Of a DNA stretch of 64,000 nt, positions 19,989 to 46,258 are shown one piece after another. Within the stretch, counting starts at the first letter, position 1, and each line of letters starts with the position of its first letter. The stretch lies in the sequence record KJ019086.1; one strand, given 5' to 3'. The notes under the pieces were generated by a model, which ran no database searches, was not told where the DNA came from, and saw only the letters and a program-made list of their open reading frames with translations. Position numbers and translations under genes: made by a program.

Positions 19989-20363
19989 ATGAATACATAT
20001 GGTTCTCCCGAAGGTTATCTCTTTAACCTTCATACCTGCTCAGCATCAGAAGCGAAGCGAATGTGGAAAGAATCTATAAAGAATGATTGGAAACATAAAT
20101 GTGCTTATTGTGGATCGGAACATGAAATTACTTTAGATCATATAGTACCCAAAGCGAAAGGGGGTACTAGTCATACAACCAATGTCGTAGCTTGTTGTCG
20201 TTCTTGTAACGGGAGTAAGGCATATGAGGATTGGATTATCTGGTATATTCAACAGCCATTCTTCACTGAAGAGAGGAGGGAGGCTATTGAAAAGTGGATG
20301 GAGAAGGGCCTCCTCAACAATAACTTAGTTGCATATCCACCCAGAAGAAATGTCGTTTATTGA
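19989..20363 (+). CDS. HNH endonuclease
   Basis: CAYCG...LDHIVPKAKGG...NVVACCRSCNGSK. Confidence 0.9.
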   Translation: MNTYGSPEGYLFNLHTCSASEAKRMWKESIKNDWKHKCAYCGSEHEITLDHIVPKAKGGTSHTTNVVACCRSCNGSKAYEDWIIWYIQQPFFTEERREAIEKWMEKGLLNNNLVAYPPRRNVVY

Positions 20364-20579: not shown

Positions 20580-23500
20580 ATGATCTCAACAGCGACTAAG
20601 ATTAAATTTAAAAGGTCTGGTGTAGCCGGACGTAGACCCTCCTTAGCTGATCTTCAGTTAGGTGAATTGGGGATCAATTATAACGATGGTAAACTATTTT
20701 TCCGACAGGAAAATGAAGTAGTTGGCTCTCGTATCATTGAACCTGGACAGGGTGATGTAATCGGTAAGACTATTTTCGTATCCACAAAGGGTAACGATAA
20801 CAATAGTGGTCTTAACGAAAGAGATGCCAAGAGAACTGTTAAAGCGGCCGCCGCAGTAGCAGAACCTGGTGACTCCATCAAACTGTATCCAGGTCAGTAC
20901 ATCGAAGATAACCCTATCGTATTTAAGGATAGGGTATCTGTAGAGGGTATGGAGCTTCGTAACGTTCTCGTTACTCCAGCCAACCCCAGTAAAGACTTGT
21001 ATCAAGTTGGTGAGGCGTTCCACGCTACCAACCATTCCTTTGTGTCCAATAGGGATTCAACAGATGGTGCCTCTATTATCACCTATCGTCCTCTAGAGGG
21101 AACTGCGTCTGACAGGTATTTTGACGCGGCTAGACTCATCAGGGACAATCTTAGCTTCATTGCTAACGAGACAGTAGGTTTCCTAACCAGTGGATATTCA
21201 GGCTTTGCCGCTGGTCAGAGATCACAGGACGCTGCTCGTGCTCTAGAACTAAACAAGAACTTCATAGTAGAAGAAGCATTTCAATATATCAACTCTCCTG
21301 ATTATACAGGAGCCACATACTTCAACCCAGACCCAGCACAGTGTAAGAGAGACCTAGGAAATATCATTGATGGTTGGAGATATGATCTCATCTCTGATGG
21401 TAACACCAGATCTACTGGTCTTGGTCTAACCTACTACGCACCTATTCCCTTTGTGAATAGTGCTAATGTTGCTGACCTTGTATACAACAGAAATAACGGT
21501 GATGTTCTAATTGAAACCGACGTAGATACACAGGTTTCAGTTGGTGAGAAGATCAAACTACAGGATATCAGACTAGAGTGTGGTTCCTACAATAACGACT
21601 TCTTTATCACTGGTTTCAAGTATGATAACACCAGTGGTATTGGAACAGTTAATCTACCCTTTATCCATAACGTCAAGGTTGGAGACCTTGTTAAGTTTGA
21701 TGGTTTAGAGTTTGATTGTCCTGCCTATGGTGCCATTGAGTATGGTATCCAGGACTTCAAGTATAATGAAACTACTGGTGGAAGTGTTGTCACACTCACC
21801 AGAGATCACGATCTAAAGATTGGTGACACCATTGAACTAAGAGATCTTCAGTTCGATTGTCCCGCCTATGGTGGTGACTTCACTAATATCATCAACCTAG
21901 AATACAATAAGACCAGTGGTCAGGGTGTTATCACCTATGACAAACCCGCTGATCTCAAGTCTGGTGACGTTGTTATCCTCTATGACCTCACACTAACTTG
22001 TGATGCTTATGGTAACGCTATCTCAGTTACTGATTTCTCTTATGATAACTTCACTGGTATCACTGAAGTAGAAGTAAATAGACCCCACAACCTCCGTCCC
22101 GGAGACCTAATCAAACTAGAGAACCTTAAGTTCTCTTGTGATTCCTACCTTAATGAAACATACAAGGTCTCTAACTTTGTATATAATGAGAGCACTGGTG
22201 ATAGTGTCCTCACCCTAACTGAACCACATAGTTTAGTTGCTGGTAAGAACGTCAGACTTGCTGACCTAGTTTTCTCCTGTAACTCCTATGTTCCAACCGC
22301 TAAAGCAATCTCTGATTTCCAGTATGATGAAGTAGTTGGTATCTCTACTATTACTCTAGCATCTCCACACAACTTATCAGTTGGTGAGCAGTTCAGACTA
22401 GAGGATTTAGTATTCTCCTGTAACTCATATTCCTTCACTGATATTCCTATCATTGATGCACCATATGATAATGTAACTGGTTATGTAACCCTATCGTTCT
22501 CTGGTGACCACGGACAACAGGTTGGTGAGAGAGTAAGACTCAGAGATATTGAGTACTCCTGCCCTGGTGGTTCAGGTATCACTACAACCTTGTTCCCCGA
22601 TGGAACCTTTGGTTATGAGTTTGAAATCCTAAGTGTTCCAAACACTAAGAAGATGATTCTTAATGTTGGCACCTCCACTATTGAACACTCCTATGTGAGT
22701 GGTGGTACTGCTACCGTTGGTATTACAACTACTATCTTCCCTGATGGAACACAAGGTTTCGACTTCAATGTATCCAGTGTTAATAGTTCCACTGTTATCG
22801 AAGCAAGTGTTGGTATTTCTACCATCGCTCACAACTATGTTTCTGGTGGATCATTATTCGTTGGTTTCACTACCACAGTATTCCCCGATGGAACACAAGG
22901 TGATACCTTCAGAGTTAATTCTATTCCTTCTAGCACTCAAATCAGTGTTAATGTTGGTGTATCTTCTATCGCCCATACTTTCGTATCCGGTGGTACAGCA
23001 ACTGACCTAGACTCTTTCATCCCTGTATCTGGTTTCACCTACAATGAAGGTGACGGAACTGGACTAGTATCCCTAGACAAGGCACACAACCTAGTGGTTG
23101 GTGACTCTTTTGTTCTAGAGGATCTTAAGTTCAACTGTAACTCCTACAGAACAGGTGGTACTTCTACTATTGATATCACTAACTTTGAGTATGATAAGGT
23201 AACCGGACTATCTACAGTCACACTATCTTCTTCACACAACCTACATGTTAATGATACCGTAGCACTATATGATATCAAGTTCTCTTGTCCTGGTGGTTCA
23301 GGTATTACAACTAATATCTTCCCCGATGGAACCAGAGACAACTTCTATGATGTAGTTGCTGACCTAAACCCCAACCAGATTATTGTTCGTGTTGGTAAGT
23401 CTGACATTACTCACACATACGCTAGTGGTGGTAGTCTATCCGTTGGTATCACTACTAACATCTTCCCTGATGGAACTAGACCTTCTGGTGACTTCTTCCA

Positions 23501-26500
23501 GGTCATCTCTGTCCCTTCTACCAAGTCTGTTCTAACTCAGGTTGGTCTATCCTCTATCGCCCACTCATACGCAAGTGGTGGTAAGTTCTACACTGGTATC
23601 ACTACTAATGTATTCCCACAGGTATTCACTGACCCCAACATCAAGGTAACCAACGCTGTATATGATGAAGTATCTGGTGTTATCACCATTACTACTAACA
23701 AGGCACACGGACTCACTGCTACGGCACCTGTTCTACTACAAGACCTAAACTTCTCTTGCCTCTCTGGTGGTGTAGGAAACACCCCAGGCAACCTTGTGTT
23801 CCCCAGGAACCAGGAAGTTTATGATGTTGTGTCCGTTCTATCTACTACACAATATACGATCAATGTAGGTCCTTCTGACTTCGCTCACGCATATGTTGAT
23901 GGTGGTACTTCTACCACACAGAACATCACTAAGGCATCCTACAACAAAGGAACTGGTGATCTAACAGTAACCCTAGACAAGCAACACGGTTATTCAGTTG
24001 GTGATCGTGCTAGTGTGGTTGATCTCCTCTTCTCCTGTCAGTCTGGTGGTCCTAACAACCAACCTGGAACACTTCTATTCCCTCGTCCTACTGATGAGTA
24101 TGAAGTTCTATCCGCAAGTGGTAAGACACTCACAGTTAATGTTGGAGCGTTCCCATCACTAGTTCATACCTATAAGAATGGTGGATCACTAACCTATAGT
24201 TCTACTGTACTTCCTGTAAGTAACGCAGTTTATGATCAATCAACTGGAGTTCTAACACTTACCACATCAATTGCACTAGGGGCACCTGTTGGTTCTACCA
24301 TTAAGATGCAGGGTCTAAACTTCTCCTGTGCCTCTGGTGGTCCTGGTAATGACGCTGGTGCTATTGTATTCCCAAGACTAGACACCCCTACCTTCAAGGT
24401 GAAGGAAGTCAAGAGTGGTGTATCCTATGTTATCAATGTAGGAACCTCCACACTCTCACACACCTATACTTCTGGTGGTTTCTCATCACTCAAGAAGTTG
24501 AAGAACGACCCCAATATTTTCAAAGTTATCGACACCCCAACACCTAGTAAGGTTATTACTAATGTCGGTGTATCCTCTATCGCCCATGACTATGTGAGTG
24601 GTGGTAATATGTTCGTGGGTATCACCACTAATGTATTCCCTGATGGAACTCGCCCTGATGGAAGTAGGTTCGAAGTTATCTCCGCCCTATCACCCAACCA
24701 GGCACTCATCAACATCGGTGTTTCTACTATCACCCACAACTACGATAGTGGTGGTAGGATGCAGTATGGCACTACCAATGAGAGACCTGTTCTAGACTTC
24801 CTATATGATGGTCAGACTGGTATTTCCACTGTAACCATCAGAGGAACCCATGGTTTGTCACAGGGTGACCTAGTGAAACTCAAAGGTCTTGAGTTCTCTT
24901 GCACCAACTCACCTGGTATTACAACTACTATCTTCCCAGATGGAACTGCCGCTGGTCTCAATATCTACAAGGTTACTGAGATTATTAGTAACAGTACCTT
25001 CAAGACAAATGTAGGTAGAGTTGGATTCGATCATACTTACATCCAAGGTGGTTCCGCTTTCGTTGGTATCACTACTAACATCTTCCCAGATGGAACACAA
25101 GGTTACAACTATACAGTTGCCGCCATTCCTAATAAGAATCAGGTAACAGTTGATGTGGGTATCTCCAGTATCCAACATGATTATATTCGTGGTGGATCAC
25201 TATTCTCTGGTAAGACTAACGAGAGAGATATTGCAGACTTCAAGTATGATCACATCTCTGGTGATGCGGTTCTTACCTTCAGAAAGGCACAGAACTTATT
25301 CACACAAGATCTAGTAAAACTTAAGAACCTTCAGTTTGATTGTCCAAACTCTACTGGTATCACTACTACTCTCTTCCCAGACGGAACCAGAAGTAACCTC
25401 TTCCTAATCAAGGAGAGACTAAACCCAACACAGTTCAAACTCAATGTTGGCACTTCACCATTCGGTCATGACTATGTGAGAGGAACAGGTCAGGCATTCG
25501 TTGGTATCACTACTAACATCTTCCCTGATACCAAGACACAACCAAGTAAGTTATTCAAGGTTGTTGATGTTCCAACTCCTACTACTATCTCCGCCAAGAT
25601 TGGTGTATCCACTATCTCCCACTCATATGTTAAGGGTGGTAAGGTATTCGTTGGTATTAACACTGATATCTTCCCTGGAGATGAGCAAGTATCACCACTA
25701 GGTGACACATATACAGTTCAGAGTATCACTAAAGATGGTGAGTTGGTTATCAATGTTGGACTATCTTCTATCAGTCACTCCTATGGTGGCGGTGGTAAGG
25801 TTCTATATGGACAGAGTTCTGGTAACAACCTACAACATATCACTGGTCCTGGTGTCCTAGATGCAACCATCGCCGCTGTGGACTTCGAGAAACAGGTAGC
25901 AATCAACGCACTAAACAACAGACCTTGGGGTTCATTCGTTCCTGAAGAGACTGCTGTTGTGGAGGCGTTCGCCTATGATAACCAGACTGGTTTCGGAACA
26001 GTAACTGCTAGAGGAATCAACGTCAACACTGGTGACACCATCAGAATGAGTGACATTCAGTTTGTTTGTTCTGAGGAATACGCAGGTGTAACCACTACCT
26101 TCTTCCCTGATAATACTAGACCAGAGGGTCAGTACTTTAGAGTAGAAAGAAGAATCAACATCGATGAGTTTGAAGTTAATATTGGTGTTTCTACTATCAA
26201 ACACGTATTCAACTACGAAACAGGTGGTAACGTATATCGTTACAGACAGTCTATTCTAGATGTTAACTACGATAGATCCAGTGGTATCACTAGTATCCGA
26301 GCAACCAAGCATGGTTACAAGGCGAAAGATATCGTGGAACTAGGTGATATCGAGTTCGATTGTCCCGTATTCAAACCTCAATATGATATTGAGAACTTTG
26401 TTTATGATAACACAACTGGTCTATCCACAGTTACTACTACTGTAGATAACACTATCAAGGTAGGTGACAATGTAAAACTAGCAGACATCAAACTAGAGTG

Positions 26501-29500
26501 TCCTCCATATGGTAACCAGAGAGTTATTGATAACTTTGTTTATGATAACAAGAGTGGTCTTTCCACCATATCACTAACAGCAGCACACGGACTCAACCTA
26601 AGACCTAGACCTTCTGTTTCTATCTCTACCGCCCTCTATGATAACCAGACTGGTATCCTAACCGTTACCACCAATGCTGACATCAACTTCACCGATAGAA
26701 GTGGTCAGGGTGTTCAACTCAGTGGTCTAAGGTTCTCCTGTGACTCCGCTGGTTTCCCTGGAACTCTCACCTATCCTGAAGAGAATCTAGTTTATGATAT
26801 CCTAGAGATTCAGTCTCCTAGTAAGTTTAAGATTAATGTTGGTCTCTCCACTATCGCTCACGAGTATGTGAATGGTGGTGCCGCTACTAAGGTTGATAGA
26901 TTCGATGTGAAACTACAGGGTATCAAGTTTGATTGTCCCGCCTATGGAAACACAATCGATGTTACTAACTTCCTATACGATCAGAGAAGTGGTAACTCAC
27001 TAGTTACCGTAGATAAGGCACACAAACTATCTGTTGGTGATAACATCAAACTAGCGGATCTCAAGTTCCAATGTGCTCCATATGGTAACGATTACAATGT
27101 TCTAAACGCAGATTACGACAACACAACTGGTATTATTACAGTAACCACTAACCAAAACATCAACGGTGTTGGTGTTGGTGATACTATTCGCCTCTCCAGA
27201 CTACAGTTTGATTGTGTAGGTAGTGGTCCTGAGTATAATATCACTAACGTATTCTTCAATACTGGTAACAGATCAGTTATTCTCACAGTTCCTGAAAGAC
27301 CAATTGGTCTAAACCCAGGTGATGACATTAAACTAACCAATATGTCATACCTAGAAGGTGGTAGTGGTAATGTAGTTGCGTATCCAGACGGAAGAGATTC
27401 GAGTCTAAACATCTTCCGTATCAATGATGTTCAACCTAACTCCATTCTCCCTGGATACTTCGATGTAACCACAGCGTTCCCCAATGTTAAGGATCCTTTC
27501 GCGATCTTCAACAATACTGGTAGACTAACCACTGGTATTACTACTAACATCTACCCTGAGAATGTAGGTGCTGAAGGTGGTTTCTATGAAGTTATCCGCC
27601 TAAGACAAGATAACCAGTTTGAGATTCAGGTAGGAACCTCTACTATCACTCACAACTATGTGAGACAAGGACAGATGTTTACTGGTGTAACCACCAACTT
27701 CTTCCCTGGTAACCTACAGAACTCACCTAGAGGAAACATCTTTGAGATTGTGGAAGTTCCCACAGCAACACAGGTGAGAATCAATGTAGGTGTATCTTCT
27801 ATCTCTCATAGTTATGATAGTGGTGGTCAGATGTTTGTTGGTATTACTACTAACATCTTCCCTGATGGAACCAGAGGTAACCTATTCCCAGTTGTTGGAG
27901 TGGCAAATACTCTCACCCTAAGAATCGACGCTGGTGTATCCAGTATTCCTCACAACTATGTTTCTGGTGGAGAACTATTCGTAGGTATTACAACTAATAT
28001 CTTCCCTGGTAACTCACAGAACTCACCAAGAGGTAGTATCTTCAAGGTTCTATCTAAGGATAACGAGTGTGGTGCTGATAGATTCACTATCAATGTTGGT
28101 GTATCTTCCATCACTCACGGTTATGTTGAGGGTGGAACAGTCACCACTGGTGTTACAACTAACAAGTTCCCTGATGGAACACACGGATTCAAGTTCCCTG
28201 TTATCGATGTTCTAGATGACAACTACTTCACCGTGAATGTTGGTACTTCTACTATCACTCACAACTATATCTCTGGTGGTTTCACTAGAAGACTTGAAGT
28301 TCCTATCAATAGTTTCGTATATGATAGAGTTTCTGGTCTATCCACAGTGGGTATCCAAAGTCACAGAATGAATATCGGTGACCTTGTGAAACTTCGTGAT
28401 GTGAAGTTCAACTGTGATCCATATGGTGGAGAAAAGACTATCTCTGGTGTTGTTTATGATAATACCTCTGGTAGAATGACCGTCAACACCACTGGTTCCC
28501 ATAGTCTAAACATCAATGATGTTGTGAAACTCTCCAATATTCAGTTGGATTGTTCCCCATATGGTAACGAGAGAACTATTACCGCCGCCACCTACAACAG
28601 AAACAATGGAAACCTAAGTGTTCAGGTATCTGAACCTCACAACCTCAAGATTAGTGAGAATGTGAAACTTAAAGGTTTAGAGTTCTCCTGTTCCTCAGAA
28701 CACGCAGGTGTGACAACAACAATCTTCCCAGATTCAACCGCACCTTCTCTAAACATCTACGCCATCCAGAGTATCACCAACTCCACAACCTTCATGGTTA
28801 ATGTTGGAACCTCTACTATCAGTCACAACTATGTTTCTGGTGGTTCCGCTTTCGTAGGTATCACAACTAACATCTTCCCAGGTGATAGCCAGAACTCCCC
28901 CAGAGGTTCTTTCCTCAGTGTGGTAGATATCCCAGCATCAGACGCCTTCGTGGTGAATGTAGGGGTTTCTACTATCTCTCACGGGTATGTTAGAGGTGGA
29001 TTGGTTCAGACAGGTATTACAACTGATGTATTCCCTGATGGAACACAGAGTGATTTCTTCAAGATTGAAGATGTCCCTAGTAATAATACAGTTGTAATCA
29101 ACGCAGGTATCTCTTCTATCATCCATAGATACAACTCTGGTGGTTTCGCCGCCAAGTATGTTACCTATCAGTCCAATAACTCACAACTACTTGATAGTTC
29201 TGTTATTAGAGTGAGTGGTGATTGTATGGCAGTTGGTGAGAGAGTTGAAGAACTCGCAGGTATTGTTACCTCCATCATCAAGAATGGTCCTTCAATCGCA
29301 CCTGGTGGTATTCCAGTAGATGTGGTAAGTGCATCCTACGACCAGTCTGGTGGAGCACTATCAGTCACAGTCAAAGACGCAATTGACCTCACACCAACTA
29401 ACATAGTTAGAATCGAAGGTCTTATCTTCGAGTGTGAGTCCTCTGGTGTAACAAACACTCGTGTATATCCTGACAATAAGGTATTCAACTATGAGGTTCT

Positions 29501-32483
29501 ATCAGTTCAGTCTCCAACAACCTTCACTATCAATGTAGGTTCTCAGGCAGATATCCCACACACATATGTGAATGGTGGAACTGTAAGACCAGGTAACAAG
29601 TTTGATGTGGCAACCGCAACCTACAATACTGAAAATGGTATTGTTAGAGTTACTACCACTGAAGATAACTACTTGGTTCTTGGTAGAGGAGTTAACCTAC
29701 AGGGTCTAAACTTCTCCTGTACCTCTGGTGGTCCTAACAACAAACCTGGAACACTAACCTTCCCCGACAAAACACCAACCAATGTAACCGCCGCCACATA
29801 TGATAGTGTGACTGGTGTATTACGTATCACAACCAACAGACCTCACCAAGCATACAAGGACGCGTTTGTATCCCTAAACGGACTAACCTTCACTTGTGAT
29901 CCAGGTGGTCCTCTAGTATTCCCTAGAAACCCTGATACTAAGTCCTTCAGAGTTACTAAGAGAGTTGATGACTACACATATGAGTGTCAGTTGGCACCGA
30001 CCAATAAGGTTCATACTTATCTAAGTGGTGGTACTTCCTCCACAGGAAACGGAAACTTCAGAGTTTCTCGTCTCATTGATACAAAGACCTTCGAAGTCAC
30101 AATGGTTCCTCTAGATCTACCACATACCTATGTAAATGGTGGTTCCGCCGCTAGTGTATTCACTAGACAGATCATTGATGGAATCAACATCAACACTAGG
30201 AAGTGTGCTAGAGACGTTAGACGTATCTACCTCGCAGTGGCACACGATATCACTCGTGGTGGTAACTGGAAGTGTGTTGAAGGAGCGAAACTCTACTACG
30301 ATAACGTGGGTCAAACCAAGTTTATCTCTGGTGGTGAAGTAAATCAAACCGTTGAGGCACTTGACTTCTCCCTAAACATTGTTAGATGTTTAATCAACAA
30401 CGTAACATGGGGTGGAGTTCCAAGAGGATATCTCACTAAGGGTGAGAGAAGTGAACTAAGAATTCCATCTTCAGCTAAGACTTCAGTGGTTGGTTTCAGA
30501 CAACAACTACTTTCCAACCAATACACTACTCAGAAGAAGAGTATTTCTGGTATGGTATACGATAACCTTACGGGTATCGCAACCGTCACCACTAAACTCT
30601 CACATGAACTCATCAAGTATGATGGTATTCAACTCTCAGATATTGAGATGAGATGTACTGGTAGTCCAAGGATTACCACCAATGTATTCCCTGATGGAAC
30701 ACAAGGTGAGATCTTTGAGGTTATGGAAACTCTAGATGATAGAGTAGCATACATCGTAACTGACGCGTCATACACCAACACCACTGGTAAGTTGGTAGTA
30801 ACAACAACAGGAAACAATGATATTCCTGTTGGATCAAGAGCAAAACTAGATGGTTTACTCTGGACTTGTTCATACGATCCTTCAAAACAACTTAAGTTCC
30901 CAGAGAACAGGAAGTTCCGTTATGAGGTTATCGCAAAACCAGATGGTACAACACTAGAGTTCAATGTTGGTATCTCTACGATTCCACACACATTTGTTCC
31001 AGCTCCTATAGATGTTGAATACACAGTCAAGGAGGATCCAGTTAAGTTTAAGGTTCATGTTGGTACAGTTTCCTTCCCACACACCTACTTCGGTGGTGGA
31101 ACAGTATGGCACAAACTACCATTCACTCCACCTTTCACCCAAACACAGATCAAGGACGTATCACAACAGAAAGATCCAGTCCAGTTCTCTAACAATACTC
31201 CTAACGGATGTGCTAATGTATTCTCCGCTATCAGTAATTGTATTGGTGTTGTTACTAGTATCGTAGCAAATGGATTAGAAGGATCAGGTATCTCCACAAC
31301 TTATCCAGGTAATGATGGTAAAGGTGTTCCAACTATGGATGAGATGCCTTCACAGGGTGTTGGTAACATTATCAAAGGTCCATACATCAGAAACTGTACG
31401 AACTTCGTTCCCAAGTCTATTGGTATGAGAATGGATGGTTTCGACGCGGAACCTGGTGATGAAATCTCCAATGGTGTTCAAGGTTCATCTAACGTTGACT
31501 CCTTCACCCAGTTCAACCCTGGTGGTGTTGGTTGTTCCATCTCTAACGGAACCTACCAACAGTTGGTTTCTATCTTCACTATCTGTTGTGACGAAGCAAT
31601 CGTATGTGACTCTGGAGCACAACTCGACCTCACTAACTCCAACTCTTCCTTCGGTAGATTGGGTCTAGTCGCAAGAGGTATTGGTGACAAACTCTCCAAG
31701 TGTATCGACAGATATACTGGTATCGTCGCCAAAGAGGCATCAATCGAAGATGACCTAGTTGTTGTGAAGGGTATTGGTGATAAGAGACCCTACGATGGTC
31801 AGGGTATTTTCTTCGGAGAACTCTTCAGGGATGTGGTTAGTATCGAAGTTCTGGACGGTGGTTCAGGTTACAACGATGATATTCCACCTAACGCGTTTGT
31901 CGCAGAACCTACTGGTCCCGCTGGTATTAAGGCGGAAGTTTCACCAACAGTCAGAGATGGTGTTGTTGTTTCTATCGAGGTTATCGCAAATGGTAACCAA
32001 TACAGAGAGAAATTCCCTGAGGTTGTAATATCACCTCCTAAGAGTCCTCTTGGTAGAACCGCAAAAGCAAGGGCAATTACCGAACCTCTCTACTATAATG
32101 TAGAAAGTTCTTCCCCACCTGAAGAGGGTACAACTAGTATCATCTTCAAACAGCGTCTAAATAATACCGTATCGGTAGGCACAACTGTATTCTTCTCTAG
32201 ATTAAGTCTACAGATTGCCTCCTCTCACTCCTTCGAATACATTGGTGCTGGTAACAGCATTAACGGAGCAAGACCTTCTGAAGGTGGAGTTCCAATTAAG
32301 GAAAATGAGATCGTGAAGGAAGACGGTGGTTCAATTGTCTATACCTCCACTGACCAGGCAGGTAACTTTAACATTGGTGACGATTTCGTTATCAACCAGT
32401 TCACTGGTACTATCACTGGTAGATCGTTCGATCAATCAGTCCTAAATAAAGTTACTCCACTCATCATCGCCCTAGACAGTTAA
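20580..32483 (+). CDS. giant virion structural protein (3967 aa): fibre-type N-terminus, split beta-helix, helical modules and 31 nested beta-domains
   Basis: TKIKFKRSGVAGRRP...GELGINYNDGKLF start; IFVSTKGND beta-helix cap; recurring Y(D/N)xxTG...HxL..GD.V.L..L.F.C and GITTxxFPDGT...VNVG.S.I.H.YVSGG half-modules; late promoter. Confidence 0.9.
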   Translation: MISTATKIKFKRSGVAGRRPSLADLQLGELGINYNDGKLFFRQENEVVGSRIIEPGQGDVIGKTIFVSTKGNDNNSGLNERDAKRTVKAAAAVAEPGDSIKLYPGQYIEDNPIVFKDRVSVEGMELRNVLVTPANPSKDLYQVGEAFHATNHSFVSNRDSTDGASIITYRPLEGTASDRYFDAARLIRDNLSFIANETVGFLTSGYSGFAAGQRSQDAARALELNKNFIVEEAFQYINSPDYTGATYFNPDPAQCKRDLGNIIDGWRYDLISDGNTRSTGLGLTYYAPIPFVNSANVADLVYNRNNGDVLIETDVDTQVSVGEKIKLQDIRLECGSYNNDFFITGFKYDNTSGIGTVNLPFIHNVKVGDLVKFDGLEFDCPAYGAIEYGIQDFKYNETTGGSVVTLTRDHDLKIGDTIELRDLQFDCPAYGGDFTNIINLEYNKTSGQGVITYDKPADLKSGDVVILYDLTLTCDAYGNAISVTDFSYDNFTGITEVEVNRPHNLRPGDLIKLENLKFSCDSYLNETYKVSNFVYNESTGDSVLTLTEPHSLVAGKNVRLADLVFSCNSYVPTAKAISDFQYDEVVGISTITLASPHNLSVGEQFRLEDLVFSCNSYSFTDIPIIDAPYDNVTGYVTLSFSGDHGQQVGERVRLRDIEYSCPGGSGITTTLFPDGTFGYEFEILSVPNTKKMILNVGTSTIEHSYVSGGTATVGITTTIFPDGTQGFDFNVSSVNSSTVIEASVGISTIAHNYVSGGSLFVGFTTTVFPDGTQGDTFRVNSIPSSTQISVNVGVSSIAHTFVSGGTATDLDSFIPVSGFTYNEGDGTGLVSLDKAHNLVVGDSFVLEDLKFNCNSYRTGGTSTIDITNFEYDKVTGLSTVTLSSSHNLHVNDTVALYDIKFSCPGGSGITTNIFPDGTRDNFYDVVADLNPNQIIVRVGKSDITHTYASGGSLSVGITTNIFPDGTRPSGDFFQVISVPSTKSVLTQVGLSSIAHSYASGGKFYTGITTNVFPQVFTDPNIKVTNAVYDEVSGVITITTNKAHGLTATAPVLLQDLNFSCLSGGVGNTPGNLVFPRNQEVYDVVSVLSTTQYTINVGPSDFAHAYVDGGTSTTQNITKASYNKGTGDLTVTLDKQHGYSVGDRASVVDLLFSCQSGGPNNQPGTLLFPRPTDEYEVLSASGKTLTVNVGAFPSLVHTYKNGGSLTYSSTVLPVSNAVYDQSTGVLTLTTSIALGAPVGSTIKMQGLNFSCASGGPGNDAGAIVFPRLDTPTFKVKEVKSGVSYVINVGTSTLSHTYTSGGFSSLKKLKNDPNIFKVIDTPTPSKVITNVGVSSIAHDYVSGGNMFVGITTNVFPDGTRPDGSRFEVISALSPNQALINIGVSTITHNYDSGGRMQYGTTNERPVLDFLYDGQTGISTVTIRGTHGLSQGDLVKLKGLEFSCTNSPGITTTIFPDGTAAGLNIYKVTEIISNSTFKTNVGRVGFDHTYIQGGSAFVGITTNIFPDGTQGYNYTVAAIPNKNQVTVDVGISSIQHDYIRGGSLFSGKTNERDIADFKYDHISGDAVLTFRKAQNLFTQDLVKLKNLQFDCPNSTGITTTLFPDGTRSNLFLIKERLNPTQFKLNVGTSPFGHDYVRGTGQAFVGITTNIFPDTKTQPSKLFKVVDVPTPTTISAKIGVSTISHSYVKGGKVFVGINTDIFPGDEQVSPLGDTYTVQSITKDGELVINVGLSSISHSYGGGGKVLYGQSSGNNLQHITGPGVLDATIAAVDFEKQVAINALNNRPWGSFVPEETAVVEAFAYDNQTGFGTVTARGINVNTGDTIRMSDIQFVCSEEYAGVTTTFFPDNTRPEGQYFRVERRINIDEFEVNIGVSTIKHVFNYETGGNVYRYRQSILDVNYDRSSGITSIRATKHGYKAKDIVELGDIEFDCPVFKPQYDIENFVYDNTTGLSTVTTTVDNTIKVGDNVKLADIKLECPPYGNQRVIDNFVYDNKSGLSTISLTAAHGLNLRPRPSVSISTALYDNQTGILTVTTNADINFTDRSGQGVQLSGLRFSCDSAGFPGTLTYPEENLVYDILEIQSPSKFKINVGLSTIAHEYVNGGAATKVDRFDVKLQGIKFDCPAYGNTIDVTNFLYDQRSGNSLVTVDKAHKLSVGDNIKLADLKFQCAPYGNDYNVLNADYDNTTGIITVTTNQNINGVGVGDTIRLSRLQFDCVGSGPEYNITNVFFNTGNRSVILTVPERPIGLNPGDDIKLTNMSYLEGGSGNVVAYPDGRDSSLNIFRINDVQPNSILPGYFDVTTAFPNVKDPFAIFNNTGRLTTGITTNIYPENVGAEGGFYEVIRLRQDNQFEIQVGTSTITHNYVRQGQMFTGVTTNFFPGNLQNSPRGNIFEIVEVPTATQVRINVGVSSISHSYDSGGQMFVGITTNIFPDGTRGNLFPVVGVANTLTLRIDAGVSSIPHNYVSGGELFVGITTNIFPGNSQNSPRGSIFKVLSKDNECGADRFTINVGVSSITHGYVEGGTVTTGVTTNKFPDGTHGFKFPVIDVLDDNYFTVNVGTSTITHNYISGGFTRRLEVPINSFVYDRVSGLSTVGIQSHRMNIGDLVKLRDVKFNCDPYGGEKTISGVVYDNTSGRMTVNTTGSHSLNINDVVKLSNIQLDCSPYGNERTITAATYNRNNGNLSVQVSEPHNLKISENVKLKGLEFSCSSEHAGVTTTIFPDSTAPSLNIYAIQSITNSTTFMVNVGTSTISHNYVSGGSAFVGITTNIFPGDSQNSPRGSFLSVVDIPASDAFVVNVGVSTISHGYVRGGLVQTGITTDVFPDGTQSDFFKIEDVPSNNTVVINAGISSIIHRYNSGGFAAKYVTYQSNNSQLLDSSVIRVSGDCMAVGERVEELAGIVTSIIKNGPSIAPGGIPVDVVSASYDQSGGALSVTVKDAIDLTPTNIVRIEGLIFECESSGVTNTRVYPDNKVFNYEVLSVQSPTTFTINVGSQADIPHTYVNGGTVRPGNKFDVATATYNTENGIVRVTTTEDNYLVLGRGVNLQGLNFSCTSGGPNNKPGTLTFPDKTPTNVTAATYDSVTGVLRITTNRPHQAYKDAFVSLNGLTFTCDPGGPLVFPRNPDTKSFRVTKRVDDYTYECQLAPTNKVHTYLSGGTSSTGNGNFRVSRLIDTKTFEVTMVPLDLPHTYVNGGSAASVFTRQIIDGININTRKCARDVRRIYLAVAHDITRGGNWKCVEGAKLYYDNVGQTKFISGGEVNQTVEALDFSLNIVRCLINNVTWGGVPRGYLTKGERSELRIPSSAKTSVVGFRQQLLSNQYTTQKKSISGMVYDNLTGIATVTTKLSHELIKYDGIQLSDIEMRCTGSPRITTNVFPDGTQGEIFEVMETLDDRVAYIVTDASYTNTTGKLVVTTTGNNDIPVGSRAKLDGLLWTCSYDPSKQLKFPENRKFRYEVIAKPDGTTLEFNVGISTIPHTFVPAPIDVEYTVKEDPVKFKVHVGTVSFPHTYFGGGTVWHKLPFTPPFTQTQIKDVSQQKDPVQFSNNTPNGCANVFSAISNCIGVVTSIVANGLEGSGISTTYPGNDGKGVPTMDEMPSQGVGNIIKGPYIRNCTNFVPKSIGMRMDGFDAEPGDEISNGVQGSSNVDSFTQFNPGGVGCSISNGTYQQLVSIFTICCDEAIVCDSGAQLDLTNSNSSFGRLGLVARGIGDKLSKCIDRYTGIVAKEASIEDDLVVVKGIGDKRPYDGQGIFFGELFRDVVSIEVLDGGSGYNDDIPPNAFVAEPTGPAGIKAEVSPTVRDGVVVSIEVIANGNQYREKFPEVVISPPKSPLGRTAKARAITEPLYYNVESSSPPEEGTTSIIFKQRLNNTVSVGTTVFFSRLSLQIASSHSFEYIGAGNSINGARPSEGGVPIKENEIVKEDGGSIVYTSTDQAGNFNIGDDFVINQFTGTITGRSFDQSVLNKVTPLIIALDS

Positions 32484-32487
32484 GATC

Positions 32488-32838
32488 ATGGCAGCAGTTG
32501 CTTTAAATACGTTCAAAACGGTCAGGCATTTAGTTTCTGATTCCAATGTGGGGATTTATACATCCCCCATTGGTGTTGCCTCTATTGTCCTATACGCTCA
32601 GGCGACACACGTTGCGAACGATGAAAGTGTATATTTCATTAACTTTTCACATGCTCGTCCCGACGAGGATCCTGTGCAGTTTGAAATCATTAAGGATGGT
32701 CCAGTTATCCCTAATGACGCACTAAACCTATTAACAGGTAGATTAGTTCTCGAAACTGGAGACGAACTTAGAGTATCAGGAAATACGACCGGAGATGTGA
32801 AGGTTGTTGTTTCTATTCTAGAGACTGCAAAGTCTTAA
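32488..32838 (+). CDS. small beta-sandwich structural protein (116 aa)
   Basis: Directly after the giant gene; KLV/RLVLETGDELRV-type pattern. Confidence 0.65.
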   Translation: MAAVALNTFKTVRHLVSDSNVGIYTSPIGVASIVLYAQATHVANDESVYFINFSHARPDEDPVQFEIIKDGPVIPNDALNLLTGRLVLETGDELRVSGNTTGDVKVVVSILETAKS

Positions 32839-32870: not shown

Positions 32871-35800
32871 ATGCCTCTAAATTATCTTACCGGAAGAGTA
32901 AGTAGATTACAAGTTGGATTTCCAGGGTTTTCAACAGCAAAGGACCTTACAGTTGATGTAGCAGGTGCCATTGGTATTGATACCCAAAACCCAAGAGCAG
33001 CTGCCGACTTCCCAGATGTCAGTATCCGTGGTGATATTGTTGACTCTGTTGGATTTACCGGTGGTATTGGGTATTTTCTAGCGCAAGATGTTCAGGGTGT
33101 TCGGTGGGTAGAGGCTCCACCTATCAACTCTAACGCTATCTTAGTGTTAGACAATGGAGTTATCGTTGGTGCTGGATCATTCATTGGTCTAAACTTTGAC
33201 TCTGGTAAGGATGAGGACTTCCTCTCGGTTGTTCCTGACCCACTAAACCCACAGATTGCAAAGATTGCATATGATGTTCGTTGGGTAAGATATAATTACG
33301 GTAATAATAAAGGTATCTCCACAGGTTTTGGAGATAATGGTGACTACTCCTCTATCCCTGGTTATGGAACCACAGAGGCAGTTGGTGTTACCTCAGTTGG
33401 TATTGGTACTAACCAACCACTAGATGACTTCCAAGTTGGTATTGGATCTACTGGTGTTACTATCAACGGACCTCTAGGTCTAGTTGATGCAGAAATTATT
33501 AAAGCAAAATCAATCTCGGTTGAAGGAAACCTAGAGGTTGAATCACTTATTGTTAGACCTGGTGTTGCCACTCTAACCACTCTAGATGTATTGAACGAGG
33601 CGTTCATACCAGTAGAGTATGTTGGTTTCTCCAGCATTCAAGATGCAAATATTGATGCTCTCTTTGCTAATCAGTTACTAGCAGGTATTACTACCCTAGG
33701 TTTCGGTGGTGAAGATGTATTCATCCTCAACGACTTATATGTTCAGGGTGGTTTAGGTACCTTCGATGGCGACGTATTCGTTGGTGGAGACCTAACTGTT
33801 AAGGGTGAGACGTTCTTCAACCAGATTAACGCAGTCAACTTATCAGTATCTGGTATTGCCACTATCGTCCAAGCGGAGATAGCTGTTGGTTTAGTTACCG
33901 ATCTAAAAGTATCTGGTTTCTCTACACTATCAGATTTCTCATTCAACATTGGTGTTGGTACATACCTAGAACTAGAAGATCTAGATGTATCTGGTGTTGG
34001 TAGTTTTGGTGTTGTCAACTCTGGTGATATTAATGTTAGTGGTGGTTTAACCGCTAGTGAGATTGATGCAGATAAGGGATACATTGGTATTCTCACAGCA
34101 GACTCTATTGTATCTGGTGCAGGTACTATTGGTTCTATCGAGTCTGATGGGAACCTAACAACACTTAATGATATTATTGTTGGTGGTGCTTCAACCTTCG
34201 TTGGTTTGGGTACTTTCCAAGACGATCTCTTTGTTGGTGGTGACCTCTTTGTTAGAGGTGATGTTACCTTTAAGAATATTAATGGTGAACAACTACTAAT
34301 CAGTGGTATTGGTACCATCAAGGAACTAGTCTTTGATAGTGGTATTGGAACCTCACTAGAAGTGAGAGATCAGATTACGACTGGTATATCTACGATCAAT
34401 GAAGCAGATATTCAAGATGCCGCTGTTGAGAGACTCACTGTTGGTGATGCAGAGATCATCGGTATCGCAACTATTACCGAGATTGATGTAGATAGAGGTA
34501 GAGTTGGTATCCTAACTGGTACAGACCTCTCCTATGCTGGTATCGGTACTATCACGGAGATTGATGTTGACCAGGGTAGAGTTGGTCTAGTCACTGGTGA
34601 CACACTACTATACTACGAACAGTCTAGGATCAATAGAGTTACCTTCTTTGATAACTACCTATCAGTTAATCAGAGTCTAAGAGTTTCTGGTCTCTCCACC
34701 TTTGTTGGAACAGGTACATTCTTTAATGACCTCTATGTTGGTGGTGACCTATATGTTGCTGGTGAACTAAACTTCAAACAACTCAATGGTGAGAACCTAT
34801 ACCTAACTGGTGTTGGTACCATCTATGATTTACGTAACACTGTTGGCTTCATTACTAACCTCTACGTAGAAGAGTCTGTAACTGGTTTAGCAACCATCAG
34901 TAGTCTAGTTGGTTCTTCCGCCACTATCACAGACTTCACTGGTGAGTCACTACTCATCCAGAATCCATTCAACCCAATGCCTCTGGACCCAACTGGGATC
35001 CCAGGACAGGGTGTTATTGATAGTCTCCTAGTTAGAAACCTAACTTCCTCTAACAACATTCTAGCCAATGACATTGATGCCAACTTCGTTGACACCGATG
35101 ATCTAAAGGCTGGTGTTGGTACTATCACTGACCTAGAGTGGACTACCGCTGTTGGTGATGACACTACTACCAATACTCTACAGGTTACTGATACAGCAAC
35201 CATTAACATCATCGATGCCAACCAGATCGATGCCGAAGATGCTAATATTGGAGTTGCCACCCTCTCTAGTCTCCTAGTAACTGGTGTCACTACCTTCAAG
35301 GGTCAGGTTGATATTGAGGATATTGAGTTCGTTGACCAGAGTGTCACCGGTATTTCCTCCATCAACATTCTCAAGTTTAATGTTGGTTATGGAACTTACC
35401 TAGAGGTCACTGACTCAGTAACTGGTGTTGGAACTATTGGTCTTGCCAGTATCACAACCGCTCAGGTATCCTTCCTAGATGTAAGAGATGAGGTAGTTGG
35501 AGCATCCACTATTGGTGTTCTATCAGTAACTGAAGGATTTGCAGTATCTGGTTTCTCCACCTTTGTTGGTTTCACTACCTATAAAGGAGATGTATTTGTT
35601 GATGGTAACTTAACTGTTACTGGTTTCGTTAGTTTCACACAACTAAACGCTGATCAATCACAGATTGGTATCCTAACTGTATTCGATGCGTTAGACGCTA
35701 GAACGGGTGTTGGTACATTCAAACACCTAGAGACAGTAGATAGTGCAGTTCTATCAGGTGTATCTACCATTGGACTCACAACCTTCAAGAATGGTGATGT

Positions 35801-38477: not shown

Positions 38478-38497
38478 AACACCTCTCCCACTCCCTC

Positions 38498-38505
38498 TAT
38501 AAATA
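38498..38505 (+). promoter_or_regulatory. T4-type late promoter
   Basis: Exact TATAAATA upstream of the GTG at 38549. Confidence 0.75.
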
Positions 38506-38548
38506 TCTGTATATCTAACACTGCAGATTATAGGGGGAATGTGAACCC

Positions 38549-39208
38549 GTGGCGAATCAGAATTTTCGTGTCAAAAAAGGTATAGAAGTTGGCTTAGGTG
38601 CCACTTTTCTATACGCAGACGACAGTGGAGTTGGCATTAATAGTGCTAGCCCACGATCAAACCTAGACGTTCGAGGTAGATCCCAAACAGAGGAACTACT
38701 GGTAGACAACTATGCAGAGGTGCAAGGACCCTCTACATTCGTTGGACTAGGTACCTTTGGGGGTGATCTATATGTTGGGAATGATCTATATGTAAAGGGC
38801 AACCTATCATTCACCAGTTTTGAATCTGAGACTGGTAATGTAACAGGTGTTCTTACCACAAGAGACTTTAATGTAACCGGATTATCTACGTTTGCGGGAG
38901 ACGCCACCTTCCAAAGTGACGTAAATATCTCTGGTGCTTCTTCAATTACTGGAAACTTAGTAGTTTCTGGTGCCTCTACGCTCACAGGTATCGTCACAAC
39001 TGGCGATGACCTCTATGTGGGTGGTAGTTTATATGTATTCAATGATATCTTCTATGATGAGATTACTGCTCTACGCTCACAGGTATCGTCACAACTGGCG
39101 ATGACCTCTATGTGGGTGGTAGTTTATATGTATTCAATGATATCTTCTATGATGAGATTACTGGTAGAAACCTCAGTATCTCTGGTATTGCCACACTCAG
39201 ACAGTTAG
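38549..39208 (+). CDS. 5' fragment of a frameshifted tail fibre gene
   Basis: MANQNFRVKKGIEVG fibre start; goes out of frame inside the 95-bp duplication. Confidence 0.75.
   Translation: MANQNFRVKKGIEVGLGATFLYADDSGVGINSASPRSNLDVRGRSQTEELLVDNYAEVQGPSTFVGLGTFGGDLYVGNDLYVKGNLSFTSFESETGNVTGVLTTRDFNVTGLSTFAGDATFQSDVNISGASSITGNLVVSGASTLTGIVTTGDDLYVGGSLYVFNDIFYDEITALRSQVSSQLAMTSMWVVVYMYSMISSMMRLLVETSVSLVLPHSDS
38974..39163 (+). repeat. perfect 95-bp tandem duplication (38974-39068 = 39069-39163)
   Basis: Direct base-by-base reading; 95 is not a multiple of 3, so it shifts the frame. Confidence 0.95.
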
Positions 39209-46200: not shown

Positions 46201-46258
46201 TAAATACAAATACGGCTCAATGAGCCCTTTTGTACGTACACAAAGGAGAAAAACCTAA

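What the first reader, a model, noticed from the sequence alone, without database searches (positions are those of the whole stretch)
21455..31115. A tree-shaped protein: 31 beta-domains nested like balanced parentheses
Seen: the roughly 95-aa module has an A half (Y(D/N)xxTG..T.T....H.L..GD.V.L..L.F.C) and a B half (GITTxxFPDGT...F.V......VNVG.S.I.H.YVSGG). They are not simply alternated. From 21455 to 25810 the order is A1-A8, B B B, A A B B, start of a B, three complete AB units, rest of that B, B, AB, B, AB, B, B: 15 A and 15 B halves, with depth returning exactly to zero. The chain then resumes the helical module it interrupted (...GLTYY / HITG...DATIAAVDF). From 25960 to 29160 the order is AB, AAA(with one AB inserted mid-A)AA AB BBBBB, AAA BBB, again balanced. 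Two smaller balanced nests follow (about 29315-30165 and 30535-31115). A halves that open a nest almost always end CxxY(G) (CPAYG, CDAYG, CNSY, CPPYG, CDPYG), whereas those closed at once end CPGGS, CTNSP, CxSGG etc. Inference: recursive domain insertion into the same loop, up to 8 deep with side branches, so one polypeptide folds as a hairpin-like or dendritic arm whose two strands run out and back. That would be a branched virion appendage rather than a bead-on-string repeat. I know of no description of this architecture, but could not search.
Basis: partly seen in the sequence, partly recalled or inferred. Interest (0 to 1): 0.88.

Follow-up and report, generated by a model that had tools for sequence, protein, structure and literature searches.

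The report
Nested beta-barrel domains in cyanophage fibre
One 3,967-residue fibre-like protein of a marine Synechococcus phage is built from 31 small beta-barrel domains, most inserted one inside another up to eight deep; this plan is known so far from cyanobacterial RNA polymerase but not, as far as I could find, from a virus particle protein.

Summary
The window is Synechococcus phage ACG-2014f (isolate Syn7803US17). The finding lies in one ORF, 20580-32483, annotated 'hypothetical protein'. They form five balanced groups, up to 8 levels deep.

The nesting reading is well supported but not proven, because no model coordinates were available.
- A/B order obeys a bracket grammar in 66 of 69 diverged relatives (24 expected by chance).
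- A-run and B-run lengths match far more often than chance.
- Four halves are themselves split by complete AB units.
- The sequences flanking groups 1 and 4 are directly adjacent in relatives that lack those groups.
- In AlphaFold models, deleting the last B of an AAABBB nest removes only the third strand of the first A.

Against a strict requirement for balance, one isolate (US26) carries an in-frame deletion that leaves five A halves unpaired.

Recursive self-insertion of a small beta domain is already described for the Si3 insertion of cyanobacterial RNA polymerase beta' (6 levels). This is therefore a new, deeper variant in a new domain family, not a new principle. Presence in the virion and a branched shape remain inferred.

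The parts
20580..32483 (+). Whole gene (3967 aa plus stop): fibre-like giant protein, Syn7803US17_263
   Evidence: Single ORF. 100% identical to KJ019086.1. PHROG tail-fibre families 17885 and 5342 match. No Pfam family.
20580..21464 (+). N-terminal scaffold (aa 1-295). It ends in the first part of helical module 1.
   Evidence: Conserved in shorter relatives of 822-1736 aa. Aa 209-272 give a weak Pfam Phycobilisome match of 16 bits.
21465..25808 (+). Group 1: tree of 15 AB domains (aa 296-1743), 8 levels deep. Domains 2, 3 and 5 carry branches, and one B half is split by three AB units.
   Evidence: The flanks are adjacent in S-SCSM1 and L022.
25809..25955 (+). Spacer 1 (aa 1744-1792): the remainder of helical module 1, which group 1 interrupts
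   Evidence: It aligns immediately after the N-terminal part in relatives that lack group 1.
25956..26240 (+). Single contiguous AB domain (aa 1793-1887)
26250..28292 (+). Group 2: tree of 7 AB domains (aa 1891-2571), 6 levels deep. One A half is split by an AB unit, and the innermost unit is degenerate (no Cys, no His).
   Evidence: In S-CAM7 the unit inserted in the split A is AABB instead of AB.
28302..29156 (+). Group 3: AAABBB nest (aa 2575-2859). This is the fragment that was modelled.
   Evidence: AlphaFold models with and without the last B.
29157..29318 (+). Spacer 2 (aa 2860-2913): first part of helical module 2
   Evidence: Adjacent to spacer 3 in L013 and L061.
29319..30155 (+). 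Group 4: an AB, then an A plus a B split by an AB (aa 2914-3192)
   Evidence: It sits between two scaffold pieces that are contiguous in relatives.
30156..30539 (+). Spacer 3 (aa 3193-3320): helical module 2, an intact paralogue of module 1
   Evidence: hhalign of A6 against A7: probability 98%, E 1e-13.
30540..31112 (+). Group 5: an A plus a B split by an AB (aa 3321-3511)
31113..32480 (+). C-terminal scaffold (aa 3512-3967)
   Evidence: 47-81% identical in relatives of 822-4172 aa. phrog_5342 'tail fiber protein' matches. No Pfam or PDB sequence match.
32488..32838 (+). 116-aa ORF that follows the AB-fibre gene here and in relatives
   Evidence: phrog_1276. It holds the same position in US26, S-CAM9 and S-8S56.

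Best explanation
The gene encodes a giant fibre-like structural protein of a T4-like cyanophage.

Scaffold and domains. A conserved scaffold of about 980 aa carries 31 copies of one small all-beta domain. The scaffold is the N-terminal region, two homologous helical modules and the C-terminal region. Each domain is made of an A half (three strands) and a B half (three strands), probably forming a six-stranded barrel.

Insertion. New copies have repeatedly been inserted into loops of existing copies. Most went into the A|B junction, three into the first loop of B, and one into a loop of A. As a result, 18 of the 31 domains are discontinuous in sequence, and their two halves lie up to about 1,400 residues apart.

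Shape. The chain therefore runs out along the A halves and back along the B halves. Each nest has both ends at its base on the scaffold. Neighbouring domains are joined by two covalent links. Groups 1 and 2 are branched.

What is shown: the repeat order, its grammar in relatives, the insertion sites, and the adjacency of flanks in relatives.

What is inferred: that nested partners form one barrel, that inner domains must fold before outer ones, that the arms are stiff rods of perhaps 20-25 nm, and that they sit on the virion and serve host contact.
For: 1. Exact balance in five separate groups. All three long non-repeat spacers fall where depth is zero.
2. In 69 representatives that are at most 50% identical to each other, with at least 100 aa flanking the array on both sides, 66 never place a B before its A. 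Order shuffles predict 24.1 (P about 8e-31). 42 are exactly balanced, and 32 of those reach depth 2 or more. Of 56 arrays with depth 2 or more, 32 are balanced, against 8.7 +/- 2.5 (maximum 20 in 5000) when run lengths are reshuffled.
3. Differences from relatives are balanced subtrees. In S-CAM7, AB becomes AABB at two places. P0067 has a 5-deep version of group 1.
4. Complete AB units split four of the halves, and other relatives carry 350-560 aa of unrelated sequence between an A and its B.
5. The flanks of groups 1 and 4 are contiguous in S-SCSM1, L022, L013 and L061.
6. A halves that are followed by an insert carry C-x-x-Y in 12 of 14 cases, against 0 of 14 for the others.
7. The AlphaFold model of AAABBB is all-beta with 3 strands per half (pLDDT 78). 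The model of AAABB keeps every strand except the third strand of the first A. That strand therefore had its hydrogen-bond partner in the deleted last B.
8. An independent BFVD model of the paralogous A6-A8+BBB region superposes over 296 columns, with a TM-score normalised to the query length of 0.61.
9. Nested, non-contiguous partners score above permuted partners under couplings learnt from contiguous pairs: window z 1.7-3.2, S-CAM7 z 2.1-2.8.
Against: - No coordinates, contact map or solved structure were available. Pairing is read indirectly from DSSP strings of two models of moderate confidence (pTM 0.53-0.54).
- The pLDDT of the orphaned A half did not fall when its presumed partner was deleted.
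- The covariation signal is modest and negative in some small arrays.
- Isolate Syn7803US26 carries an in-frame deletion that leaves 9 A against 4 B, so a balanced array is not required for propagation of that isolate.
- Contig L025 reads AA BBBB where its relatives have AAABBB or AAAABBBB. L016 stops after A8 BBB.
- Many distant relatives show A halves without a detectable B. I take this to be a divergent B type, but I did not show it.
- Virion location is not shown for this protein.
Confidence: 0.75

Rival explanations
1. The A-run and the returning B-run form one continuous two-layer antiparallel rod, a long beta hairpin of half-units, not a chain of discrete barrels. The topology is the same: out and back, with A(i) beside B(n+1-i). 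But there would be no separable domains.
For: Last strands of A and first strands of the next A are long (10-11 residues), and A-A and B-B linkers are very short, 0-9 residues. The pLDDT of an orphan A stays high. pTM is only 0.53.
Against: 13 contiguous AB units exist as free-standing modules, and single AB units occur alone in many relatives. Foreign sequence can sit between A and B. The best fold matches are to a compact six-stranded barrel.
Confidence: 0.12
2. A and B are independent repeat types. A-runs stack on themselves as one solenoid and B-runs as another, and equal numbers are a by-product of how the array was duplicated.
For: US26 and L025 tolerate unequal numbers. Some distant relatives show A halves with no detectable B. 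Orphan A keeps a high pLDDT.
Against: - Run lengths match far beyond chance across diverged proteins.
- B never precedes its A in 66 of 69.
- Halves split by whole AB units are not expected of solenoids.
- Removing the last B abolishes a strand in the first A, about 210 residues away, and none in its neighbour B.
Confidence: 0.07
3. The halves pair between chains. In an oligomeric fibre an A half of one subunit is completed by a B half of another (domain swapping), so the sequence grammar reflects assembly, not intramolecular nesting.
For: Tail fibres are usually trimers. Recursively inserted domains of RNA polymerase Si3 are reported to exchange secondary-structure elements (PMC11515920).
Against: A monomer model already satisfies all strands. 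This protein has no trimerisation chaperone domain, unlike its neighbours. Contiguous AB units need no partner chain.
Confidence: 0.05

Closest known systems
Si3 insertion of cyanobacterial RNA polymerase beta' (RpoC2): recursively inserted HABAS / sandwich-barrel hybrid domains
   Same: Copies of one small beta domain are inserted into other copies of the same family. This gives discontinuous outer domains, bifurcating nodes and an elongated arm whose two ends sit at one insertion point in a host domain. Nine extra domains and a 6-level nesting are reported (PMC11515920; PMC13114784).
   Different: - Different protein class: enzyme against virus structural protein.
- Different domain family: no RNA polymerase chain scored among the top Foldseek hits (the only one was rank 49, probability 0.06), and there is no sequence match.
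- Here there are 31 domains in five trees and 8 levels.
- Three kinds of insertion site are used.
- The plan is widespread in a family of at least 602 protein clusters.
FCCH domain of ubiquitin-activating enzyme E1 and FCCH-like decoration domains on siphophage tail tubes
   Same: A six-stranded antiparallel beta-barrel of about 100 aa. It is itself an inserted domain in E1 and faces outward on phage tails (PMC13576161). It gives the best PDB fold matches: Uba1/Uba6, and 2v31 with a TM-score normalised to the target length of 0.55. One BFVD hit carries that name.
   Different: Matches are weak (E at least 1.4e-3). There is no sequence similarity. No self-nesting has been described for FCCH domains.
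Beads-on-a-string repeat fibres and decoration proteins (Ig-like, FN3 and BIG2 repeats in phage structural proteins)
   Same: Many copies of a small beta domain on a virion protein, probably serving reach and weak adhesion (my own background knowledge).
   Different: In those proteins every repeat is contiguous and joined to its neighbour by one linker. Here 18 of 31 domains are discontinuous and neighbours are joined by two links.
Nested domains of the pneumococcal pilus adhesin RrgA, and the out-and-back chain path in the T4 gp37 fibre tip (recalled from memory, not tested here)
   Same: Domain-in-domain nesting of 2-3 levels (RrgA). A fibre whose chains run to the tip and return (gp37).
   Different: Those involve different folds and shallow nesting. 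The domains are unrelated to one another, not copies of one family. No comparison was run.

Membership tests
Recursive same-family domain insertion (type case: RNA polymerase beta' Si3) | A domain's sequence is interrupted by one or more complete copies of the same family | tested here: met
   Balanced A/B order. Four halves are split by whole AB units. The same grammar holds in relatives.
Recursive same-family domain insertion (type case: RNA polymerase beta' Si3) | The flanks of an insert are contiguous in homologues lacking it | tested here: met
   Group 1 flanks lie at aa 324/326 of S-SCSM1 and L022. Group 4 flanks are adjacent in L013 and L061. AB against AABB in S-CAM7.
Recursive same-family domain insertion (type case: RNA polymerase beta' Si3) | The two separated halves form one compact domain in three dimensions | tested here: inconclusive
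   Only DSSP strings were available. The third strand of the first A is lost when the last B is deleted. There was no contact map.
Recursive same-family domain insertion (type case: RNA polymerase beta' Si3) | The domain belongs to the HABAS / sandwich-barrel hybrid fold | tested here: not met
   The only RNA polymerase chain in the top 50 Foldseek PDB hits is at rank 49 with probability 0.06. There is no sequence hit. So this works like Si3 but is not a member of that domain family.
E1 FCCH-like beta-barrel | Six-stranded closed antiparallel barrel of about 100 aa | tested here: inconclusive
   3+3 strands per AB unit. Foldseek to Uba1/Uba6/2v31 gives probability 1.0 but E at least 1.4e-3 and a target-normalised TM-score of 0.55 at best.
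E1 FCCH-like beta-barrel | Sequence-profile match | tested here: not met
   No Pfam, NCBIfam or PDB sequence match.
Tail fibre or baseplate-associated structural protein of T4-like cyanophages | Match to phage tail-fibre families and location in the fibre gene cluster | tested here: met
   phrog_17885 and phrog_5342. The neighbours are giant 'baseplate wedge' proteins with LamG and Peptidase_S74 domains, and tail-collar proteins.
Tail fibre or baseplate-associated structural protein of T4-like cyanophages | Presence in the virion | not testable with these tools
   The only support is a depositor's note, 'virion protein', on the S-SCSM1 relative.
Phycobiliprotein (Pfam PF00502), for the helical scaffold module | Score above Pfam's gathering threshold | tested here: not met
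   16.0 bits against a cut-off of 22.2 in this protein. Two relatives reach 22.7 and 25.8 bits.
Phycobiliprotein (Pfam PF00502), for the helical scaffold module | Significant profile match to solved phycobiliproteins, with the conserved Cys aligned | tested here: inconclusive
   7 of the 11 listed PDB hits are C-phycocyanin alpha chains, but E is 0.038-0.57. The conserved Cys aligns with the Cys region of the chain.
Tandem beads-on-a-string repeat protein | Every repeat unit is contiguous in sequence | tested here: not met
   Only 13 of the 31 units are contiguous AB.

The most novel reading that the evidence does not exclude
The helical scaffold modules from which the nested arms sprout may be diverged phycobiliprotein-like (globin-fold) domains that still carry a bilin on their conserved cysteine. 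In that case this cyanophage would display a pigment-binding module, related to its host's light-harvesting proteins, at the core of a dendritic single-chain fibre. The evidence is only weak and recurrent: Pfam PF00502 at 16-26 bits, and C-phycocyanin alpha chains at the top of a profile search with E 0.04-0.6.
Probability: 0.07. Interest if true: 0.9.

Novelty: new variant of a known kind. Interest (0 to 1): 0.7.

Why it matters
If the nesting is real, this is the deepest and largest recursive domain insertion I could find described: 8 levels and 31 domains, against 6 levels in RNA polymerase Si3. It would also be the first in a virus structural protein.

Folding. The outermost domain cannot close until about 1,400 intervening residues have been made and folded, so order of folding and chaperone need become concrete questions.

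Evolution. A nest has both ends at its base, so whole arms can be gained, lost or swapped by recombination without disturbing the scaffold. The S-CAM7, P0067 and US26 comparisons show exactly this.

Annotation. The work defines an unannotated domain family: at least 602 clusters at 50% identity, no Pfam model, mostly 'hypothetical protein' or misnamed 'baseplate wedge initiator' in marine cyanophages. It also gives a simple bracket-parsing rule for reading these giant genes.

Tried and rejected
- Pfam, NCBIfam and PDB sequence searches of the AB unit, the N-terminal part and the C-terminal part gave nothing usable.
- The search for related loci with the AB alignment failed for lack of a conserved stretch. 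A BBB alignment worked.
The alignment was rebuilt from window paralogues and database fragments.
- Model coordinates are not exposed, so the planned contact-map test was replaced by comparing DSSP strings of AAABBB and AAABB.
- A whole-word balance test is weak. Fisher P is 0.014 against order shuffles on 21 complete ORFs, and combining discrete P values gave 0.086. I replaced it with counts and a run-length null.
- Splitting arrays at gaps of 25 aa or more produced many false 'unbalanced' blocks, because degenerate halves and foreign inserts break nests. I rejected that measure.
- Cys (A) and His (B) are lost together in 3 contiguous pairs but never in nested pairs, so this says nothing about nesting.
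- The idea that the domain is the RNA polymerase hybrid-barrel fold found no support.
- Literature searches for nested domains in tail fibres returned nothing.

Only tool alignments are cited.
Full report
**Identity and context.** The window is the last 64 kb of KJ019086.1, Synechococcus phage ACG-2014f isolate Syn7803US17. This is a T4-like cyanomyovirus (Kyanoviridae, Atlauavirus). The finding lies within one ORF, 20580-32483 (+), 3967 aa, annotated 'hypothetical protein'. Forty-three records of this phage carry the full-length gene at 98.9-100% nucleotide identity. The gene has no Pfam family. It matches the PHROG 'tail fiber protein' families 17885 (16 stretches) and 5342.

Its neighbours are as follows:
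- upstream, an HNH endonuclease;
- downstream, a 116-aa ORF (phrog_1276);
- three further giants of 1868, 2362 and 1956 aa, named 'baseplate wedge subunit/initiator' in PHROGs, two of which carry LamG and Peptidase_S74 chaperone domains;
- two tail-collar proteins.

So the gene sits in the fibre cluster.

**The observation.** I started from one AB unit of the protein and iterated two HMMs (A, 43 positions; B, 48 positions). They give 32 significant A hits and 32 significant B hits, most with domain E-values of 1e-10 to 1e-23. Nothing else in the six-frame translation of the window matches.
- Group 1 (aa 296-1743) has 15 A and 15 B and parses as an 8-level tree. Domains 2 and 3 carry a second child. 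Domain 5 carries two children in its A|B junction and three more inside its B half.
- After a 49-aa spacer come a single AB, a 6-level tree of 7 domains whose third A half is split by an AB unit, and an AAABBB nest.
- After a 54-aa spacer come an AB, then an A whose B is split by an AB.
- After a 128-aa spacer comes another A whose B is split by an AB.

This makes 31 domains, 13 contiguous and 18 discontinuous. All three long spacers fall where the running depth is zero. A halves followed by another A end C-x-x-Y in 12 of 14 cases. A halves followed by B never do, 0 of 14.

**Is the grammar general?** tblastn found the modules in 82 phage records, almost all Synechococcus or Prochlorococcus myoviruses. 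They occur in proteins named tail fibre, long tail fibre, baseplate wedge, gp7 or hypothetical.

Parsing fetched loci gave these orders:

| Relative | Order of halves |
|---|---|
| S-CAM7 orthologue | same tree, but AABB where ours has AB at two places |
| S-CAM9 | AABB AABB |
| S-8S56 | AABB AB |
| S-SCSM1 | AB AAABBB AB |
| S-T4 gp7-position giant | AAAB AB b AABB b |

Seventy-nine IMG/VR loci added many more forms. Examples are AABB (12 loci), AB AB AAABBB, AAB AAABBB B, AAB AABB B and AAAAB AB b [AABB] B AB.

An exhaustive HMMER search of 1.84 billion representatives found 602 proteins at E up to 1e-3. I then took 69 representatives that are at most 50% identical to each other and have at least 100 aa on both sides of the array.
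- 66 never place a B before its A. Shuffling the order predicts 24.1 (Poisson-binomial P about 8e-31).
- 42 are exactly balanced. Of these, 32 reach depth 2 or more and 11 reach depth 3 or more.
- Among 56 arrays with depth 2 or more, 32 are balanced. Reshuffling run lengths gives 8.7 +/- 2.5, with a maximum of 20 in 5000 trials.

P0067, a complete 3090-aa relative, has a 5-deep version of group 1: AAAAA BB AB B AB B B. Differences between relatives are thus mostly whole balanced subtrees.

**Insertions into a scaffold.** In S-SCSM1 and L022, our aa 2-286 and aa 1748-1784 align to positions 8-324 and 326-362. The two sides of group 1 are therefore directly adjacent where the group is absent. 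Spacers 2 and 3, which flank group 4, are likewise adjacent in L013 and L061. The interrupted N-terminal helical module and the spacer 2+3 module are homologous to each other (hhalign probability 98%, E 1e-13). In other relatives, 350-560 aa of unrelated sequence lie between an A and its B. So the A|B junction is a general insertion site.

**Structure.** An AlphaFold2 model of aa 2575-2859 (AAABBB; 18-row alignment) has mean pLDDT 78 and pTM 0.53 and is all-beta. It shows three strands per A half and three or more strand segments per B half (five in the first B). Confidence is low only in the first loop of each B, which is the loop that hosts insertions elsewhere. Coordinates are not exposed.

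I therefore modelled the same fragment without its last B. Every strand is retained except residues 28-38, the third strand of the first A. Its pLDDT hardly changes. DSSP calls a strand only when it has a hydrogen-bonded partner. In the full model, then, the first A was bonded to the last B, about 210 residues away, and not to the neighbouring A. That is what nesting predicts, or at least an out-and-back hairpin.

Fold comparisons:
- Foldseek against the PDB gives only weak matches. The best are the six-stranded FCCH barrel of Uba1/Uba6 (E at least 1.4e-3; 2v31 with a target-normalised TM-score of 0.55).
- FCCH-like barrels are known as outward-facing decorations on siphophage tail tubes (PMC13576161).
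- Against BFVD the hits are cyanophage fibre proteins. They include an independent model of the paralogous A6-A8+BBB region that superposes over 296 columns with a query-normalised TM-score of 0.61.

**Covariation.** Among 123 non-contiguous nested pairs, summed mutual information is 537 for the nested mapping. It is 503-519 for shifted or reversed mappings and 484 +/- 5.7 for random within-protein permutations. I also scored pairs with couplings learnt only from contiguous AB pairs. The nested mapping beats permutations in the window (z 1.7-3.2), S-CAM7 (z 2.1-2.8) and L060 (z 1.2-2.6). It does not in several small arrays. I rate this as modest support.

**Exceptions.** Isolate Syn7803US26 has a 1365-aa allele that equals aa 1-779 plus aa 3366-3967 of ours at 99.5-99.7% identity. 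The two parts are joined within a 16-aa stretch shared by the starts of two B halves. This is an in-frame, repeat-mediated deletion that leaves 9 A and 4 B, with five A halves unpaired. Contig L025 reads AA BBBB where its relatives read AAABBB or AAAABBBB. L016 ends after A8 BBB, close to the end of its contig. These cases show that balance is not needed for propagation of an isolate, or that some metagenome assemblies are collapsed. They are recent events, not conserved states. Distant relatives with A halves spaced by about 45 unassigned residues probably carry a divergent B type. I did not test this.

**Comparison with what is known.** Recursive insertion of one small beta domain into itself is documented for the Si3 insertion of cyanobacterial RNA polymerase beta'. 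That case has nine extra HABAS domains inserted into each other, sometimes exchanging strands, in a 6-level architecture with bifurcating nodes (PMC11515920; PMC13114784). The present protein works like Si3 but is not a member of that domain family. It is deeper (8 levels) and larger (31 domains in five trees), and it uses three kinds of insertion site. It belongs to a sizeable virus protein family without a Pfam model. Literature searches found no description of nested domains in tail fibres or of this protein.

**Side lead.** A profile of the helical scaffold module puts C-phycocyanin alpha chains at the top of a PDB search (7 of the 11 listed hits, E 0.038-0.57), with its conserved Cys aligned to the Cys region of the chain. 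Pfam Phycobilisome scores 16 bits in this protein and 22.7 and 25.8 bits in two relatives, against a cut-off of 22.2. This is not significant and is reported only as a lead.

**Verdict.** The nesting interpretation is the best-supported explanation (about 0.75) but still lacks a contact map or solved structure. The 'branched virion appendage' is inferred. The principle has a published precedent, so I rate this a new variant of a known kind, of considerable interest to structural and phage biologists.

Noticed in passing
L004 14050-18147 (NC_047714.1 / KJ019091.1, isolate Syn7803US26): A natural in-frame deletion allele of the gene: 1365 aa, equal to aa 1-779 plus aa 3366-3967 of the window protein. 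The join lies within a 16-aa stretch shared by two B halves. It leaves five A halves without partners. That genome is also about 20-30 kb smaller than its relatives.
   Followed up: yes
window 21030-21464 and 30156-30539; alignments A6 and A7: The two helical scaffold modules are paralogues (hhalign 98%). They give recurrent but non-significant matches to phycobiliproteins: Pfam PF00502 at 16 bits here and 22.7/25.8 bits in P0089 and P0113, and C-phycocyanin alpha chains at the top of the PDB profile hits (E 0.038-0.57). A conserved Cys aligns with the Cys region of the chain.
   Followed up: partly
window 32488-32838: A 116-aa ORF (phrog_1276) directly follows the AB-fibre gene here and also in US26, S-CAM9 and S-8S56. 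The same PHROG profile also matches AB modules inside the giant protein, so in some phages the two may be fused. It could be an assembly factor or adaptor.
   Followed up: no
all AB units, e.g. window aa 661 (Cys) and the His of each B half: Each A half has one nearly invariant Cys (97.8% of 554) and each B half one nearly invariant His (96.2% of 422). The only unit of this protein lacking the Cys (aa 2220-2261) is joined to the only B lacking the His. Three contiguous pairs in relatives have lost both. This may indicate a shared site, such as a metal site or a hydrogen bond.
   Followed up: partly
P0018-P0063 (marine metagenome proteins of about 480 aa): A compact, apparently complete protein family of about 480 aa carries about three A-like and B-like modules (A, partial B, partial A, B, A). 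It is abundant in ENA, JGI and Tara assemblies and its genomic context is unknown.
   Followed up: no
P0081 aa 664-1021, P0083 aa 1140-1490, P0089 aa 765-1320: In some relatives, 350-560 aa of unrelated sequence sit between an A half and its B half. In P0089 this stretch includes the weak phycobilisome-like match. So the A|B junction also hosts foreign domains.
   Followed up: partly
P0074, P0110, P0121 (giants of 3800-4800 aa): These arrays have A halves spaced by about 45 unassigned residues and no detectable B. They probably carry a divergent B type that my profile misses.
   Followed up: no
KJ019146.1 182588-194586: One ACG-2014f record matches the gene in two pieces over a span about 95 nt longer, and is annotated as two hypothetical proteins. 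The gene may be broken there, or the record may hold an assembly error. Not examined.
   Followed up: no
window 19989-20363: An HNH endonuclease gene lies immediately upstream of the giant gene here, in US26 and in S-CAM7. A homing endonuclease next to a highly repetitive, recombining fibre gene may not be a coincidence.
   Followed up: no
window 32871-52129: Three further giant genes follow (1868, 2362 and 1956 aa). They share PHROG 'baseplate wedge' families with one another. Two end in LamG plus the Peptidase_S74 intramolecular chaperone. None contains A or B halves.
   Followed up: partly
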